From Octopus sinensis (Eukaryota), in the NCBI RefSeq assembly GCF_006345805.1, contig NW_021828641.1, forward strand, positions 1 to 7,966: 7,966 bases of DNA, in the 5' to 3' direction. The notes beneath the pieces were generated by a model, which was not told the DNA's origin, searched no databases, and was given only the letters and a program-made list of their open reading frames with translations. Below are positions 986 to 7,951 of this stretch, one piece after another. The position numbers and the translations under genes are program-made. Numbering within the stretch: the stretch's first letter is position 1; every line of letters starts with the position of its first letter.

Positions 986-1039
986 TCATTGATGTATGCT
1001 TCCGTACGTTCAACAATAGATAGCCGCATAACCGCAACT

Positions 1040-1392
1040 GCCTTCAATCGAGCAGATCGACCCCAGGACTTATTCCTTGTAAGCCTAGTACTTATTCTAT
1101 CGGTCTCTTTTGCCGAATCGCTAAGTTACGGGGACGTAAACACGCCAGCAGCAGTTGTCAAGCGATGTTGGGTGAGCAAACACAGACACACAAACACATA
1201 CACACACATACATATATATACATATATACGACGGGCTTCTTTCAGTTTCCGTCTACCAAATCCACTCACAAGGCTTTGGTCGGCCCGAGGCTATAGTAGA
1301 AGACACTTGCCCAAGGTGCCACGCAATGGGACTGAACCCGGAACCATGTGGTTGGTAAGCAAGCTACTTACCACACAGCCACTCCTACGCCT
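1040..1392 (-). mobile_element. tRNA-derived SINE, family 'A' copy 1 (head, CORE-like segment, internal microsatellite, 3' domain)
   Basis: Minus strand begins aggcgtaggagtggctgtgtggtaag (A-box-like TGGCTGTGTGG) and has gggttcagtccc (B-box-like), then ccttgggcaagtgtctt, which resembles the CORE-SINE motif. An internal (TA/TG) microsatellite lies at about 1175-1230. Homologous copies occur at 3243-3375 and 7855-7951. Confidence 0.85.
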
Positions 1393-1422
1393 ATGCATTA
1401 CATAACAGAGGGATTTTCTAAG

Positions 1423-1675: not shown

Positions 1676-3047
1676 TCAATATGTTTTGGAACCATAATAC
1701 CTGACACTTCTTGGAATCCTCCTCCGACCACCATTCCTGTCATCAGTTCGACGACCATTCTCGTCATCAGTTCGACGATCATTATCGTCATCAGTTCGAC
1801 GATCATTATCGTCATCAGTTCGACGACCATTATCGTCATCAGTTCGACGACCATTCTCGTCATATGTTGGACGACCATTCTCGTCATCAGTTCGACGACC
1901 ATTATCGTCATCAGTTCGACGACCATTATCGTCATCAGTTCGACGACCATTCTCGTCATATGTTGGACGACCATTCTCGTCATCAGTTCGACGACCATTC
2001 TCGTCATCAGTTCGACGACCATACTCGTAATATTCAGTTGTACGATCAATCACGTCATATGTTGGTGGCTGGTATTCACCTTCGTCAATGAATGTCGTAA
2101 TTTCTCTATCGTAGGGTGGTGGTGGGATGACGGTCCATTCGTAGTCCTGTGTGCAGTGGTAGCCTAATTCCATTCCTTTCACGCCACAATGTGGATCATA
2201 ACTGCGCCAATCGTCAGAGTAGTCGCGATGGTAGCTAGGGTATCTGTTTCGTCGGTTGCTCCGGCGATAGCATCTGCCACCTCCATCATGATAATCGCCA
2301 TGGCAACCTCCATTGTGGTGACCGCCATGATGTTCTTCACCATCGTAACCTCGTTCGTTGTCGCCCTCCCCATGATGGTGACCTCCATGAGGACCTCCTC
2401 CATGGTGACCTTCTCCATGGTGACCTCCACGATGACCTCCTTCATGGTGACCTTCTCCATGATGACCTCCATGATGACCTTCATGGTGACCTCTTTCATG
2501 GCTGCCCTCCCCATGATGGTTTCCCCTATGACCTCCTCCATAGGGCCGCTCCTCACTGTGGTGACCCCCATGATGTCTCCCTCCATGTTGACCTCGTCCA
2601 TGATGCATTCCACCACGGTGGCTACCTCCATGATGGCGACCGCCGTGATGGCCACCTCGACCGTGCCCCTCTCCATGACGGTCATCGTAATGATCTTCCA
2701 CATAAACGTCAGTTGGACGATCATAATCTTCACGCTCGCCTTCATACTGATCTTCATAGCGACTTCGTCTAGGACCATAGTCATGTCGACGACTATCTTG
2801 ATATCTATAGCGATCACGTCGAAAACCGTTATCATCATCACGTCGTTGGCTTAAAGGCCGCCGAAGAAACCGTCGCCAGCGTCGCTGACCGGAATTTCGA
2901 TTCTGTTGGCCAGAATCTTGTCCATCGTCTTGACCTATGTTTTGCTGGTTCAAATGCTGACCTCTGATGCGGTCATAAAGCCTTGCAGAACGTTGAAGGC
3001 TTGGATTATCGTAGATTTCTGCAGGATCATTTTTCGATTTGTTAAAG
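1676..3047 (-). CDS. Probable terminal coding exon of an uncharacterised His/Gly-rich, Arg/Asp/Tyr-rich repetitive protein (about 456 aa in this exon; 5' exon not securely identified)
   Basis: The 425-aa ORF in the track starts at a TTG (2953). The same frame stays open upstream to 3052 (TAA at 3055-3053), adding FNKSKNDPAEIYDNPSLQRSARLYDRIRGQH. The first in-frame ATG is only at aa116 of the track ORF (2608). A pyrimidine tract and first AG lie at 3084-3048. The stop is TGA at 1678-1676. The segment is GC-rich in an AT-rich background and is the only frame open across both repeat blocks and the unique linker. Confidence 0.8.
1733..2020 (-). repeat. Coding minisatellite, 12 x 24 nt (GRRTDD[E/D]N; variants GRPTYDEN, DRRTDD[D/E]N, GRRTDDRN)
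   Basis: Plus-strand unit att(c/a)tcgtcatcagttcgacga(c/t)c repeated contiguously with no spacers. 1805-1900 is identical to 1901-1996. Confidence 0.97.
2276..2677 (-). repeat. His/Gly low-complexity coding block with degenerate GHH/HGEGHH/GGRHHGG repeats
   Basis: aa 93-226 of the track ORF. Manual count is about 41 His and 52 Gly in 134 aa. Recurrent DNA units such as catggtgaccttctccat at 2401 and 2444. Confidence 0.95.
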
Positions 3048-3084
3048 CTATTTTAACCAATCAAAAATAGAGAGAAAGAGAAAA
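3048..3084 (-). promoter_or_regulatory. Candidate 3' splice acceptor (polypyrimidine tract plus TAG) for the large exon; phase 2
   Basis: Minus strand reads ttttctctttctctctatttttgattggttaaaaTAG|CTTTAAC. The TAG at 3050-3048 is the first AG after the tract. A weaker alternative, cctgCAG|AAATC (exon start 3018), would be phase 1. Confidence 0.55.
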
Positions 3085-3165
3085 TTACGAGTCATGACAA
3101 TTAACGACACGAATAGACATACATCGTCAGCAAATGCTGATGACTCTGATGAAGGAGCGTCTGGA

Positions 3166-3242: not shown

Positions 3243-3375
3243 TTAGTCGGCAAAATTCACTCACAAGGCCCGGGGCTATCGTAGAAGACATTTGCCCAAG
3301 GTGCCACGCAGAGGGACTGAACTCAAAACTACGTAGTCACAAAACGAGCTTCTTAACGAAACAGCCGTGTCCGTA
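3243..3375 (-). mobile_element. SINE family 'A' copy 2, diverged head fragment
   Basis: cactcacaaggc..ccggggctatcgtagaagacatttgcccaaggtgccacgcagagggactgaac aligns with 1263-1340, with a 10-nt deletion. Confidence 0.85.
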
Positions 3376-3635
3376 TGTTTGCATTTGCAACCGACAGGGG
3401 GCTTCTTTGGTAACATTTAGTAAGGGAAGAAAGGGCAGAATCTATAACCGTTTATTAATTTCTTTTTTTTTTGGTGGGGTGGGGAGGGCATTATTAGAGG
3501 AAGTTAAGCTTATGCTGATTCTTGTCCTGAATTTTAGAAACGAGTTGAAGTTTGCAGAGGGTTCCAAATGCTTGCAATGGAATATTTGCAAAGGGGTGTA
3601 TTCCGATAAACTAGTCAATTTTATTGCAACCGAAA

Positions 3636-3864
3636 GGCGGCGAGCTGGCAGAAACGTTAGCACGCCGGGCAAAATGCGTAGCTGTATTTCGTCTGTCGTT
3701 ACGTTCTGAGTTCAAATTCCGCCAAGGTCGACTTTGCCGTTCATCCTTTCGGGGTCGATAAATTAAGTACCAGTTACGCACTGGGGTCGATGTAATCGAC
3801 TTAATCCGTTTGTCTGTCCTTGTTTTCCCCCTCTATGTCTAGCCTCTTGTGGGCAATAAAGAAA
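3636..3864 (+). mobile_element. tRNA-derived SINE, family 'D' copy 1 (full length, tail type 1)
   Basis: ggcggcgagcTGGCAGAAACGTTAG (A-box-like) ... GAGTTCAAATTCCgcc (B-box; ccgcc can pair with the 5' ggcgg), a central domain (catcctttcggggtcgataaattaagtaccag), and an A-rich end aataaagaaa. Four related copies are in the window. Confidence 0.9.
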
Positions 3865-3866
3865 TT

Positions 3867-4064
3867 AGAAACGATAGCACGCCGGGCAAAAATGCTTAGC
3901 GGTAGTTTGTCTGTCTTTACGTTCTTAGTTCAAATTTCGCCGAGGTCAACTTTGCCTTTCGGGGTCGATAAATTAAGTACCTGTTACACACTGGGGTAGA
4001 TCTAATCGACTGGCCTCCCCTCCCACAAAATTTCGGGCTTGTGCCTAGAGTAGAAAATATTATT
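3867..4064 (+). mobile_element. SINE family 'D' copy 2 (5'-truncated, tail type 2)
   Basis: Starts at agaaacgatagcacgccggg immediately after copy 1. It has an 8-nt deletion in the core and ends cctcccctcccacaaaatttcgggcttgtgcctagagtagaaaatattatt. Confidence 0.9.
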
Positions 4065-4124
4065 AGTTATACTTCCAATATGTATTTCAGTGGTGGAGGT
4101 CATACAATATTTTTATTGTTTTAA

Positions 4125-4269
4125 GGCGACGAGCTGGCAGAATCGTTAGCACGCCGAGCGAAATGCGTAGCCGTATTTCGTCTGCCGTTACGTTCTGAGT
4201 TCAAATTCTGCCGAGATCGACTTTGCCTTTCATCCTTTCGGGGTCGATAAATTAAGTACCAGTTACGCA
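4125..4269 (+). mobile_element. SINE family 'D' copy 3 (3'-truncated)
   Basis: Highly similar to 3636-3780 and stops after gtaccagttacgca. Confidence 0.9.
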
Positions 4270-4692
4270 TATACAGTAATATACATATACAGTAATGTGT
4301 TGGAGATGGGAAGGACACATTTAAGAATTGACTAAATAACCACAGGTCCTCTTTTGGGATCCAAAAGTGGTACATTACTCTTTGGCTAACTACATATGTT
4401 GTTCAAAAGAGGAGGGACCACCATACACAATTGAAAGATTGAGTGGGAGATAACTCCATCTCGATAAGAAGGGGTTTTCTATTCGAAGTATTTCCTTTAA
4501 AAGCTGAATAAGCAGAGCAAGGGTACACACGGAGACAGAAAGTGTCGGCGAGGGGATCTCAGATGTGTGACGAAAGATTCCCGGACAATGGACAAGAGTT
4601 GGAATAAGAACAGAAATAAACGAGTGAAGAACGAATATACAGTGCGTGTGTTTATTTGGCAAAAACAAAATGACCGTCCCGAAATACAATAT

Positions 4693-5145: not shown

Positions 5146-5390
<245 letters not shown>

Positions 5391-5639
5391 AATCTTTTTA
5401 CTATAGGCACAAGACCTGAAATTTTGGGGGAGGGGGTAAGTCGATTACATCGACCTCAGTGTATCACTGGTACTTAATTTTGGGGGAGGCAGTAGATTAG
5501 ATCGACCCCCCAGTACGCAACTGGTACTTATTTTATCCACCCTGAAAATATTATGAAAGCAATGTCGACGACGGCGGAATTCGAACTCAGAACGTAAAGA
5601 CAGACGAAATAACGCTAACGTTTCTGCCAGCTCGCCGCC
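5391..5639 (-). mobile_element. SINE family 'D' copy 4 (inverted orientation, internal duplication, tail type 2, long (TAT)n tail)
   Basis: Minus strand reads ggcggcgagctggcagaaacgttagc..gttctgagttcgaattccgcc. The aagtaccag..ggtcgat..ccccc block occurs twice. It ends caaaatttcaggtcttgtgcctatagtaaaaaagattat and runs into the (AAT)n tract at 5146-5390. Confidence 0.88.
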
Positions 5640-6654: not shown

Positions 6655-6684
<30 letters not shown>

Positions 6685-6725
6685 TGTATGTATGTATGTA
6701 TGTATGTATGTATGTATGTATGTAT
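6655..6725. repeat. (TATG)n microsatellite, about 17-18 perfect units
   Basis: Direct reading. Confidence 0.98.
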
Positions 6726-7122: not shown

Positions 7123-7284
7123 TTGAGTGAGAGAGCCTCGCGTGCCATCAAAGTGACGCTGGGGTACAAATATACGAAGCCCGATATATCCGTCATAACT
7201 ACCCGTCTAATAAGGGTACACGAGGCACATGCATCACAACGATACCGTGATCTCATATCAAGACAAGCAGTACATGACCTTGCA
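7123..7284. repeat. Dispersed repeat fragment, copy 1 (probable retroposon 3' end on the minus strand)
   Basis: Aligns at roughly 75% (by eye) with 7355-7527 in the same orientation: ttgagtgagagagc..atcaaagt..ctggggta..aatatacgaagccc..catcacaac..atcaaga..catgac.ttgca. Confidence 0.8.
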
Positions 7285-7354: not shown

Positions 7355-7664
7355 TTGAATGAGAGAGCAGTGCATGCTATCAAAGTAATCCTGGGGTAAA
7401 ATATACGAAGCCCGGTATACCCATCATGACTACCCATCTGATAATGGTACACCAGGCAGATACATCACAACCATATGTACCCACCATGGTGACCTTTTAT
7501 CAAGATAAACAACGCATGACATTGCAGGTGTGGGGGGGGGCTAGTTAGAATTTTCTTCAGATCGTGTAGCCCATCTCGCCCAAAAGGCCCTTGTATAAGG
7601 GTTGTTTAAGGACGTTGAACGAAGTACCCATATTTCCAGAGGTGAATTATTCAAACCCCTAAAG
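7355..7664. repeat. Dispersed repeat fragment, copy 2 (longer), abutting an (ATT)n tract
   Basis: Homologous to 7123-7284. Read on the minus strand it ends in ...ctctctcattcAATAATGATAATAAT, as expected for a microsatellite-tailed non-LTR retroposon. Confidence 0.75.
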
Positions 7665-7747: not shown

Positions 7748-7853
7748 TTACATATATATACATATACATTATATACATATACAATATATATATATATTAT
7801 ATATAATATATATATATATATAATATACATGCATATATATATATATATAAATA
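7713..7853. repeat. (CA)n followed by degenerate (TA)n microsatellite
   Basis: Direct reading. Confidence 0.95.
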
Positions 7854-7854
7854 C

Positions 7855-7951
7855 ACGGCGGGTTTTTTCAGTTTCCGTCTTGGAAATCCACTCACAAAGC
7901 TTTGATTCGACCCGAGGTTTGAAACAAACTTCTTACCACGCACGTAACGCC
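7855..7951 (-). mobile_element. SINE family 'A' copy 3, internally deleted head fragment
   Basis: tttcagtttccgtcttggaaatccactcacaaagctttgattcgacccgagg aligns with 1239-1290, then jumps to ttcttaccac..acgcct (about 1365-1392). Confidence 0.8.

What the first reader, a model, noticed from the sequence alone, without database searches (positions are those of the whole stretch)
1676..3047. Unassigned block-copolymer protein: Arg/Tyr/Asp polyampholyte, His/Gly block, Cys linker and acidic-basic octapeptide array
Seen: sharply delimited blocks. The 425-aa ORF has zero Ala, about 69 Arg against 2 Lys (manual count), abundant Tyr, and no hydrophobic segment. The central block is about 31% His and 39% Gly. 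Established: Gly/His-rich proteins harden or coacervate invertebrate biomaterials (Nereis jaw Nvjp-1 with Zn, Glycera jaw multi-tasking protein with Cu, Dosidicus histidine-rich beak proteins), and Arg/Tyr-rich, Lys-poor sequences favour cation-pi phase separation, as in reflectins. This protein lacks the Met-rich reflectin motif and the GAGFA/GHGLY motifs of beak proteins. Inference: a lineage-specific, pH- or metal-switchable coacervating structural protein (beak, radula, sucker cuticle, egg case, statolith or skin granule), possibly of an undescribed family.
Basis: partly seen in the sequence, partly recalled or inferred. Interest (0 to 1): 0.8.

Follow-up and report, generated by a model that had tools for sequence, protein, structure and literature searches.

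The report
Hidden His-rich exon in octopus TGFBI/periostin gene
The odd histidine-, glycine- and arginine-rich reading frame is real, but it is one large optional exon lying in the first intron of the octopus version of a well-known secreted matrix gene (TGFBI/periostin), not a stand-alone unknown protein, and what it does is untested.

Summary
On the minus strand a frame stays open for 458 codons. The 425-aa ORF has 0 Ala, 69 Arg, 2 Lys and 29 Tyr. A central block is 31% His and 38% Gly, and twelve 24-nt units encode GRRTDD(E/D)N.

It is not an unassigned protein. It is a 1,347-nt internal exon (window 3047 to 1701, minus strand) with an AG acceptor and a CAG|GT donor. The window is 94-98% identical in its aligned blocks to Octopus vulgaris chromosome OX597836.1. 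There it lies wholly inside intron 1 of a 700-aa gene encoding signal peptide, EMI and four FAS1 domains (human TGFBIp, E 5e-74).

The O. bimaculoides RefSeq model XP_014784788.1 ("filaggrin-like") joins that gene's signal-peptide exon to this exon. It then joins it to the exon for the CCPGY half of the EMI domain. Codon phases fit this, and also fit use as a plain cassette.

The frame is selectively kept. About 10 stops are expected at the measured neutral divergence (dS 0.20) and none is seen, and at least 11 indels are all in frame. Amino-acid constraint is weak, and the array is absent from O. bimaculoides.

The pH- or metal-switchable material role is plausible: computed charge is +28 at pH 5.5 and -17 at pH 8.1. 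It is untested, and I obtained no transcript or tissue evidence.

The parts
1701..3047 (-). Internal coding exon of 1,347 nt (a multiple of 3), made of 1 nt + 448 codons + 2 nt. It encodes the whole low-complexity module.
   Evidence: tblastn of XP_014784788.1 residues 44-375 matches window 3049..2054 (67% identity, E 5e-163). The same exon in O. vulgaris is L001 21474-22820, with no indel. Splice sites are identical in both species.
3048..3085 (-). 3' splice site: pyrimidine tract ttttctctttctctctattttt, then gattggttaaaatAG | C
   Evidence: Read directly. Exon 1 of the host gene ends ...ATC AG|gtaag, and AG + C gives Ser, so the product reads PISFNKSK. This matches PFSFKKSE in XP_014784788.1.
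1695..1703 (-). 5' splice site CAG|gtatta (donor; the exon ends at 1701)
   Evidence: Read directly. AG + A, the first base of the EMI exon, gives Arg. The product then reads RSVR|IVEDAEK, as in XP_014784788.1 (RSVR|IIEDAEK). AG + C, the first base of canonical exon 2, gives Ser, which is also in frame.
2678..3046 (-). Block A, residues 1-123: Arg/Asp/Tyr/Gln polyampholyte (R 20%, D 15%, Q 10%, Y 8%), with one N-K-S sequon at residue 2
   Evidence: It is 63% identical to O. bimaculoides, close to my neutral expectation of about 64%.
2282..2677 (-). Block B, residues 124-255: His/Gly block (G 38%, H 31%, E 10%, R 8%), built from degenerate 15/30/42/54-nt tandem repeats
   Evidence: Computed charge is +31 at pH 5.5 and -6 at pH 8.1. 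It is 83% identical to O. bimaculoides.
2081..2281 (-). Block C, residues 256-322: the conserved non-repetitive Cys block (C-x27-C-x10-C, then WTVIPPPPYDRE). A fourth Cys lies 10 residues upstream.
   Evidence: It is 82% identical with no gaps, and all Cys are conserved in the three species.
2018..2080 (-). Block D, residues 323-343: Tyr/Glu/Thr-rich lead-in to the array. PPTYD...RTTEYYEY looks like the source of the repeat unit.
   Evidence: The O. bimaculoides counterpart is PPPTDDASDHPRRRLPRSVR.
1730..2017 (-). Block E, residues 344-439: coding minisatellite of 12 x 24 nt encoding RRTDD(E/D)NG, with RPTYDENG variants. Net charge is -12. It holds 9 NGR and 9 G-R-R sites.
   Evidence: It is present with 12 units but a shuffled unit order in O. 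vulgaris, and absent from XP_014784788.1.
1676..1700 (-). Read-through tail (R)YYGSKTY + TGA. This is intronic if the donor is used. If it is not, this would be the C-terminus of a truncated isoform.
   Evidence: An AATAAA lies at window 1428 (-), 248 nt after the stop.

Best explanation
The ORF is a genuine, selectively maintained internal exon of 1,347 nt. It lies in the roughly 22-kb first intron of the octopus orthologue of TGFBIp/periostin, a secreted matrix protein built as signal peptide - EMI domain - four FAS1 domains.

The exon is spliced onto the gene's signal-peptide exon, so its product enters the secretory pathway. Downstream it joins the exon that encodes the CCPGY half of the EMI domain. 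It does so either in place of the two small exons for the first EMI half (as in the O. bimaculoides RefSeq model) or in addition to them. Both routes are in frame.

The exon adds about 450 disordered residues in four parts:
- an Arg/Asp/Tyr polyampholyte;
- a His/Gly block with 41 His;
- a conserved 4-Cys block;
- in the O. vulgaris lineage only, a young acidic-basic octapeptide array that grows and reshuffles as a coding minisatellite.

Shown: the exon structure, the host gene, the phase compatibility, the maintenance of the frame and the turnover of the array.

Inferred (about 35% likely): the His block works as a pH or metal switch. It would be strongly cationic and soluble in an acidic secretory granule. 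At seawater pH it would be deprotonated, free to bind Zn, Cu or Ni or to self-associate with the Tyr/Arg parts. That would turn an adhesive matrix protein into a cross-linkable, condensing one.
For: Orthologue and gene model.
- XP_014784788.1 (O. bimaculoides, 432 aa) matches the exon at E 8e-110. tblastn gives 67% identity over residues 44-375.
- An exhaustive HMMER search with its C-terminus found a 700-aa protein, P0003. P0003 has an identical first exon (residues 1-45) and the same IIEDAEKMEELEIMECCPGYSRKIGDFGCPI exon.
- The cluster mate of P0003 is O. vulgaris CAI9739244.1, a FAS1 domain-containing protein.
- That protein matches human TGFBIp 5nv6 at E 5e-74 and Pfam Fasciclin at E 1.6e-80. 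Pfam EMI covers residues 61-124.

Position in the genome.
- The window aligns to O. vulgaris locus L001 at 15956-24862, at 94-98% identity in its main blocks.
- Exon 1 ends at 10131 and exon 2 starts at 32352, so the window is inside intron 1.
- Splice sites and codon phases were read directly.

Selection.
- Canonical exons give dS 0.20 and dN/dS 0.10 between the O. bimaculoides-type transcript and O. vulgaris.
- At that divergence about 10-11.5 stop-creating substitutions are expected in this exon, and none is seen.
- At least 11 indels against O. bimaculoides are all in frame.
- Against O. vulgaris there are 0 indels in the exon. The flanking 3.1 kb of the same alignment has 18.
- Outside the array, exon divergence is 1.0% against about 2.0% in the intron.
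- The open frame exceeds all 1,000 shuffles.

Functional hints.
- Computed charge switch: the whole exon goes from +28 at pH 5.5 to -17 at pH 8.1.
- Squid histidine-rich beak proteins were reported as not found in O. bimaculoides (PMC9068888). That leaves room for a different His-rich matrix protein in octopods.
Against: - I could obtain no transcript, EST or proteome evidence for the exon. The only joined model is a computational RefSeq prediction. It ends oddly, apparently reading into the intron after the EMI exon with the tail GDVVEERHNLF*.
- The O. vulgaris annotation does not include the exon.
- Window against O. vulgaris gives dN/dS 0.95, from only 31 differences. Block A is no more conserved than neutral expectation.
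- The Cys block shows no sequence similarity to the exons it would replace.
- AlphaFold2 gave no confident fold: pLDDT 38 from a 2-sequence alignment.
- No experiment bears on metal binding, phase separation or tissue.
Confidence: 0.72

Rival explanations
1. Stand-alone truncated isoform. The donor at 1701 is not used and translation runs on 8 codons to TGA at 1676-1678. The transcript is polyadenylated in the intron. The product is the signal peptide plus this exon only, a secreted disordered protein of about 500 aa with no EMI or FAS1 part.
For: The donor CAG|gtatta is weak, lacking G at +5. The short tail and its stop are conserved in O. vulgaris. An AATAAA lies 248 nt after the stop.
Against: The only available model splices on to the EMI exon with a perfect phase match. 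A single AATAAA in AT-rich intron DNA is weak evidence. This can coexist with the main explanation as a second isoform.
Confidence: 0.15
2. Not a functional exon. It would be an open frame left by low-complexity repeat expansion in an intron, picked up by ab initio gene prediction in O. bimaculoides.
For: dN/dS is about 1 against O. vulgaris. Other frames of the same region are also open for 177-228 codons. The O. vulgaris annotation omits it. No other protein in the searched collections carries it. AlphaFold2 finds no structure.
Against: Zero stops are seen against about 10 expected at dS 0.20, and all indels (at least 11) are in frame. The splice sites are conserved and phase-compatible with both neighbouring exons. 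The His/Gly and Cys blocks are 82-83% identical against about 64% neutral expectation. The RefSeq name carries no 'LOW QUALITY PROTEIN' flag.
Confidence: 0.1
3. Humoral defence module. A secreted His/Gly-rich, cationic-at-low-pH polypeptide would act, whole or after cleavage at its many Arg-Arg sites, as an antimicrobial or opsonising factor in skin mucus. This would be analogous to Gly/His-rich antifungal peptides and to sea-urchin SpTransformer proteins.
For: Composition, 20 dibasic sites and rapid evolution with repeat shuffling. TGFBI ig-h3-like isoforms are reported in the O. vulgaris skin-mucus proteome (PMC11431876). SpTransformer proteins share the layout of a leader exon plus one large repeat-rich exon with Gly- and His-rich regions (PMC5491942, listed).
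Against: There is no homology to any such family. The mucus paper does not identify this gene or this exon. Net charge at seawater pH is negative.
Confidence: 0.08
4. Peptide precursor. The array would be cut at each G-R-R by prohormone convertases and the Gly used for amidation, releasing many copies of TDDEN-amide or TDDDN-amide.
For: Nine G-[KR][KR] sites sit at exact 8-residue spacing. This is the classical layout of amidated multi-copy peptide precursors (established knowledge).
Against: The array is absent from O. bimaculoides and its units are shuffled between close relatives. Signalling peptides are normally conserved. The host gene encodes a matrix protein, and such acidic pentapeptides have no known counterpart.
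Confidence: 0.03

Closest known systems
TGFBIp (beta-ig-h3) / periostin family of matricellular proteins (signal peptide, EMI/CROPT domain, four FAS1 domains)
   Same: The host gene is a clear member (E 5e-74 to human TGFBIp, with all FAS1 domains). The exon shares its signal-peptide exon and its CCPGY EMI exon. Vertebrate periostin also varies a disordered, Arg/Lys-rich region by alternative splicing (my own knowledge).
   Different: In periostin the variable disordered region is C-terminal, short and made of small cassette exons. Here a single 1.35-kb His/Gly/Arg/Asp/Tyr exon sits at the N-terminus and, in the only model available, replaces half of the EMI domain. My literature searches found no His-rich exon described for this family.
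Squid histidine-rich beak proteins (HBP-1/2, Dosidicus) and Nereis jaw protein Nvjp-1
   Same: Secreted, disordered and Gly/His-dominated, with pH- or metal-dependent condensation as the proposed mode of action. This is a resemblance by composition only.
   Different: It has no GAGFA or GHGxY motifs and almost no Ala. No sequence relative was found. HBPs are separate clustered genes reported as not found in O. bimaculoides (PMC9068888). This one is an exon of a matrix-adhesion gene and carries extra polyampholyte, Cys and array blocks.
Filaggrin / S100-fused-type proteins (the RefSeq name of the O. bimaculoides model)
   Same: His-, Gly-, Arg- and Ser/Asp-rich low-complexity composition.
   Different: Filaggrin has an N-terminal S100 EF-hand domain, no signal peptide and repeats of about 324 residues, and it is intracellular in vertebrate keratinocytes. 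Here there is a signal peptide, no S100 domain (no Pfam match) and no such repeats. The name reflects composition only.
Histidine-rich region of vertebrate histidine-rich glycoprotein (GHHPH repeats)
   Same: It is a His/Gly-rich stretch inside a secreted multidomain protein, where it works as a Zn2+ and pH sensor that switches ligand binding (my own knowledge). This is the closest analogy for how the block might work within a larger adhesive protein.
   Different: There are no GHHPH motifs, no cystatin domains and no homology.
Sea-urchin SpTransformer (Sp185/333) proteins
   Same: A leader exon plus one large exon with Gly-rich and His-rich regions and shuffled repeats; disordered and fast evolving.
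   Different: That is a multigene immune family with no sequence similarity to this exon. This is a single exon inside a conserved matrix gene.

Membership tests
TGFBIp/periostin (EMI + 4 x FAS1) gene - host locus | Four FAS1 (fasciclin) domains with significant similarity to TGFBIp or periostin | tested here: met
   For the host gene product P0005, Pfam Fasciclin scores E 1.6e-80 (5 stretches) and PDB 5nv6 TGFBIp scores E 4.9e-74. The window itself holds none of these exons.
TGFBIp/periostin (EMI + 4 x FAS1) gene - host locus | The exon lies physically inside the gene and shares exons with it | tested here: met
   The window maps to L001 15956-24862, between exon 1 (10001-10131) and exon 2 (32352-32400). 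XP_014784788.1 and P0003 share exon 1 and the CCPGY exon.
TGFBIp/periostin (EMI + 4 x FAS1) gene - host locus | A transcript that joins this exon to the FAS1 exons | not testable with these tools
   The only model with the exon (XP_014784788.1) stops after the EMI exon. No RNA reads were available.
EMI / CROPT domain | Pfam EMI match above the gathering score | tested here: inconclusive
   The canonical protein scores 19 bits against a cut-off of 25, but covers profile positions 1-69 of 69. The CCPGY exon aligns to TGFBIp and periostin YECCPGYEKVPGEKGCPA at E of about 1.5 on its own.
EMI / CROPT domain | The exon's own Cys block is homologous to the first half of the EMI domain, which it would replace | tested here: not met
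   BLASTP against exons 2-4 finds nothing (E 12). There is no Pfam hit. AlphaFold2 gives pLDDT 38 and no fold. Only the Cys spacing is alike: C-x27-C-x10-C against C-x25-C-x8-C.
Filaggrin / S100-fused-type proteins | N-terminal S100 EF-hand domain and no signal peptide | tested here: not met
   No Pfam domain in the exon or in XP_014784788.1. The model starts with a hydrophobic signal-like leader, MATRQPLTLVLAVVCSIVCYCGVSVIAG.
Squid histidine-rich beak proteins | Repeated GAGFA and GHGxY-type motifs, and an Ala-rich composition | tested here: not met
   0 GAGFA, 0 GHG.Y and 2 Ala in 448 residues.
Reflectins | Met-rich reflectin motifs [M/F]D(X)5MD(X)5MD | tested here: not met
   0 motifs and 2 Met. 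No Pfam hit.
Histidine-rich glycoprotein | Cystatin-like domains and GHHPH repeats | tested here: not met
   0 GHHPH. No Pfam hit.

The most novel reading that the evidence does not exclude
Octopods, in which squid-type histidine-rich beak proteins were reported as not found, make their His-rich, pH- and metal-switchable hardening or condensing protein in another way. They would splice a lineage-specific 1.35-kb low-complexity exon into the ancient TGFBIp/periostin adhesion gene, replacing half of its EMI domain. One promoter and one signal peptide would then yield either a conventional matrix adhesin or a cross-linkable biomaterial protein for beak, radula, sucker lining or egg-stalk cement. 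A coding minisatellite would tune its charge from species to species.
Probability: 0.15. Interest if true: 0.75.

Novelty: new variant of a known kind. Interest (0 to 1): 0.45.

Why it matters
If the exon is expressed as the O. bimaculoides model suggests, a very conserved matrix gene (TGFBI/periostin) has acquired a large low-complexity module by repeat expansion inside an intron. That would be a clean case of new coding sequence born and kept under selection for frame and composition rather than for sequence.

It would also give a concrete candidate for the His-rich matrix chemistry of octopus hard or adhesive tissues, in which squid-type histidine-rich beak proteins were reported as not found.

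Practically, the RefSeq name 'filaggrin-like' is misleading, and the O. vulgaris annotation misses the exon.

Tried and rejected
- Pfam scans of the exon, of XP_014784788.1 and of the Cys region found no family.
- Two further word-index protein searches with short queries returned nothing at all, not even the known hits XP_014784788.1 or CAI9739244.1. The queries were the Cys region plus the EMI exon, and exon 1 plus block A. These negatives carry no weight.
- Exact-sequence look-ups of XP_014784788.1 and of the 425-aa ORF in the contig collection found nothing on record.
- A metagenome contig scan with the Cys block found no relative.
- AlphaFold2 on the Cys region plus the EMI exon, with a 2-sequence alignment, gave pLDDT 38. 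No fold search was therefore run.
- BLASTP of the Cys block against canonical exons 2-4 showed no similarity. The idea that the exon arose by duplicating the EMI exons is unsupported.
- P0002 (an ORF with NGLRTDDRNG repeats on an unnamed ENA contig, which I judge bacterial-type from its sequence) and P0004 (an Anisodus plant repeat protein) were rejected as chance low-complexity matches.
- Other His-like tblastn hits in the O. vulgaris locus are trinucleotide microsatellites, not paralogous exons.
- Rfam and tRNA scans of the window found nothing.
- Literature searches for the accession, for 'filaggrin-like' with octopus, and for periostin, ig-h3 or fasciclin with octopus or histidine-rich found no description of this exon.
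Full report
1. What is in the sequence

The window is AT-rich, microsatellite-laden animal DNA. On the minus strand one frame is open for 458 codons, from 3052 to the TGA at 1676-1678. In 1,000 dinucleotide-preserving shuffles of the same stretch the longest open frame averaged 130 codons and never exceeded 298.

The 425-aa ORF has 0 Ala, 69 Arg, 2 Lys, 29 Tyr, 46 His and 76 Gly. The central block is 38% Gly and 31% His, and there is no hydrophobic segment. Twelve 24-nt units encode RRTDD(E/D)NG with RPTYDENG variants, and one 96-nt higher-order copy is exactly duplicated.

2. It is an exon, not a gene

The open frame is preceded by a pyrimidine tract and ...aaaatAG|C at 3048/3047. Eight codons before its stop it contains CAG|gtatta at 1701/1700.

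The best database match is XP_014784788.1, 'PREDICTED: filaggrin-like [Octopus bimaculoides]', 432 aa, E 8e-110. Its residues 44-375 align to window 3049..2054 at 67% identity in a single frame.

That model has two parts that are not in the window. One is an N-terminal hydrophobic leader (MATRQPLTLVLAVVCSIVCYCGVSVIAG...). The other is a C-terminal piece...RSVR|IIEDAEKMEELEIMECCPGYSRKIGDFGCPIG.... The coding unit is therefore the 1,347-nt exon 3047..1701.

3. The host gene

A weak PDB match linked MECCPGYSRKIGDFGCPI to the end of the EMI/CROPT domain of TGFBIp and periostin (E about 1.5). This was a lead only.

I then ran an exhaustive HMMER search of 1.84 billion representative proteins with the C-terminal 147 residues of the O. 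bimaculoides model. It returned a 700-aa protein, P0003, from a transcript contig of run SRR32601320. P0003 begins with the identical first 45 residues and contains the identical IIEDAEK...GCPI segment. Between them it has RVSFGNGNGRAWWKGPNVCKNK...SVRCKTT, and it continues into fasciclin domains.

Its 90% cluster includes O. vulgaris CAI9739244.1, 'FAS1 domain-containing protein'. That protein matches human TGFBIp (5nv6) at E 4.9e-74 and Pfam Fasciclin at E 1.6e-80. Pfam EMI covers residues 61-124 at 19 bits, below the 25-bit cut-off but over the full length of the profile.

4. Position in the genome

The O. vulgaris locus was fetched as L001 (OX597836.1:6465778-6522956). The gene spans L001 10001-47179. 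The window aligns to L001 15956-24862 with its minus strand in the sense of the gene. The four main collinear blocks are 94-98% identical. The window therefore comes from O. vulgaris or a very close relative.

Gene layout in L001:
- Exon 1, 10001-10131: signal peptide.
- His-rich exon, 21474-22820: the exon in this window.
- Exon 2, 32352-32400.
- Exon 3, about 32949-33073: first half of the EMI domain.
- Exon 4, about 33757-33853: the CCPGY half of the EMI domain.
- Exons 5 onward, to 47179: FAS1 domains.

The whole window is therefore inside annotated intron 1. The O. vulgaris annotation does not include the exon.

5. Phases

Exon 1 ends ...ATC AG|gtaag. Both the His-rich exon (C TTT AAC...) and exon 2 (C TTC CGG...) complete that codon as AGC, Ser.

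The His-rich exon ends ...GTC AG|gt. With the first base of exon 4 (A) this gives AGA, Arg, exactly the RSVR|I(I/V)EDAEK of the O. bimaculoides model. With the first base of exon 2 (C) it gives AGC, Ser.

Because the exon is 3n long, it is in frame in either use. It can replace exons 2-3, as the model has it, or be added before them as a cassette. A third option is that the weak donor is skipped and the transcript ends after the 8-codon tail, since an AATAAA lies 248 nt downstream. I cannot tell which of these occurs.

The model's own tail (GDVVEERHNLF*) looks like read-through into intron 4. Codon G|GT at the donor would give the Gly that replaces the Ala of the canonical protein. The 3' end of that model should therefore not be trusted.

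6. Is it under selection?

Canonical exons compared between the O. bimaculoides-type transcript (L002) and O. vulgaris give dS 0.20, dN 0.019 and dN/dS 0.10. I took 0.20 as the neutral divergence.

On that basis the His-rich exon should have collected about 10-11.5 stop-creating substitutions, since 4.3% of its single-base changes make a stop. It has none in either lineage.

At least 11 indels separate the two species and every one is in frame.

Identity to O. bimaculoides varies by block. My neutral expectation is about 64%.
- Block A (N-terminal polyampholyte): 63%.
- Block B (His/Gly): 83%.
- Block C (Cys block): 82%, with no gaps.
- Block D (lead-in to the array): 33%.
- Block E (the array): absent from O. 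bimaculoides.

Against O. vulgaris the exon has 31 differences and no indel, and dN/dS is 0.95. Twenty of the 31 lie in the 288-nt array, where the same 12 units appear in a different order of variants. The rest of the exon differs at 1.0%. The flanking intron in the same alignment differs at about 2.0% and has 18 indels.

Reading: selection keeps the frame, the composition, and the His/Gly and Cys blocks. It tolerates most replacements, as is usual for disordered material-type sequence. The array is a young coding minisatellite evolving by unit turnover. It seems to have grown from an ancestral ...PPPTDD...RRR... stretch that is still seen in O. bimaculoides.

7. How it probably works

Shown: the exon is attached to a signal-peptide exon of a secreted matrix gene in the one joined model available.

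Computed:
- The exon product carries about +28 at pH 5.5 and about -17 at pH 8.1. Nearly all of the shift comes from the 41 His of block B, which goes from +31 to -6.
- 26 of 28 Tyr have an acidic neighbour.
- The array is net -12 and carries nine NGR and nine G-R-R sites.

Inferred: the module is a pH- and metal-responsive tail on, or truncated version of, an adhesive matrix protein. It would stay soluble in acidic granules and become cross-linkable or condensing in sea water. I put this at about one in three. It rests on analogy with His-rich regions of histidine-rich glycoprotein, mussel byssal proteins, Nvjp-1 and squid beak proteins (my own knowledge), not on any test.

I also asked whether the Cys block (C-x27-C-x10-C) stands in for the first EMI half (C-x25-C-x8-C). 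Only the spacing supports this. BLASTP finds nothing and AlphaFold2 gives pLDDT 38.

Albertin et al. 2022 report that they could not identify squid histidine-rich beak proteins or suckerins in O. bimaculoides (PMC9068888). This makes an octopod-specific His-rich matrix protein an attractive idea, but an unproven one. TGFBI ig-h3-like isoforms occur in the O. vulgaris skin-mucus proteome (PMC11431876), but that paper does not identify this gene or this exon.

8. Comparison with known families

The host gene is a member of the TGFBIp/periostin family.

The exon itself belongs to no described family. It has no Pfam match. It lacks the reflectin, HBP and HRG motifs and the S100 domain that defines filaggrin-type proteins. 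No relative beyond Octopus turned up in 1.84 billion representative proteins.

The RefSeq name 'filaggrin-like' reflects composition only. I found no paper describing the exon.

9. Verdict

It is corrected on the central point, because this is an optional exon of a known matrix gene, already present in a public gene model, and not an unassigned protein family.

I rate it a new variant of a known kind, of moderate interest. The interest would rise sharply if RNA or proteome data place the exon in a hard or adhesive tissue.

Noticed in passing
window 1037-1404; partial copies at 3267-3355 and 7860-7904: A dispersed repeat of about 350 nt that looks SINE-like. Further copies at 89-92% identity lie elsewhere in the O. 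vulgaris locus (L001 1941-2294, 5951-6125, 7982-8340).
   Followed up: partly
window 3634-3801, 3890-4011, 4123-4290: Three nearby copies of a second dispersed repeat (70-93% identical by segment). It is also present at L001 15097-15324 and 36471-36702. No tRNA or Rfam match.
   Followed up: partly
window 5147-5393, 1445-1601, 6655-6725, 83-246, 7752-7853: Very long microsatellites: (ATA) about 83 copies, (TGTA) about 39, (TATG) 18, and (AT)n. They account for most of the length differences from the O. vulgaris assembly and for several long spurious ORFs in the ORF list.
   Followed up: partly
window 1730-2017 (-): The array carries nine Asn-Gly-Arg tripeptides. By my own knowledge, NGR in fibronectin deamidates to isoDGR, an integrin ligand. 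In a gene family known for integrin binding this could be more than coincidence. Not tested.
   Followed up: no
window 1730-2017 (-) against L001 22503-22790: 20 of the 31 base differences between the window and the O. vulgaris exon fall in the 288-nt array. The unit number (12) is the same but the order of variant units differs, which points to gene conversion or unequal exchange.
   Followed up: yes
window 1428 (-): An AATAAA lies 248 nt downstream of the read-through stop. It could serve an intronic polyadenylation isoform.
   Followed up: no
L001 33853-33900 (O. vulgaris intron 4) against the tail of XP_014784788.1: The O. bimaculoides model's last 11 residues (GDVVEERHNLF) look like read-through of the exon-4 donor. 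The O. vulgaris intron reads differently there (GLYIPVYV...), so that tail is not conserved and the model's 3' end is doubtful.
   Followed up: partly
window 7168-7244 and 7399-7475: A direct repeat of 77 nt at 86% identity, 231 nt apart, of unknown nature.
   Followed up: no
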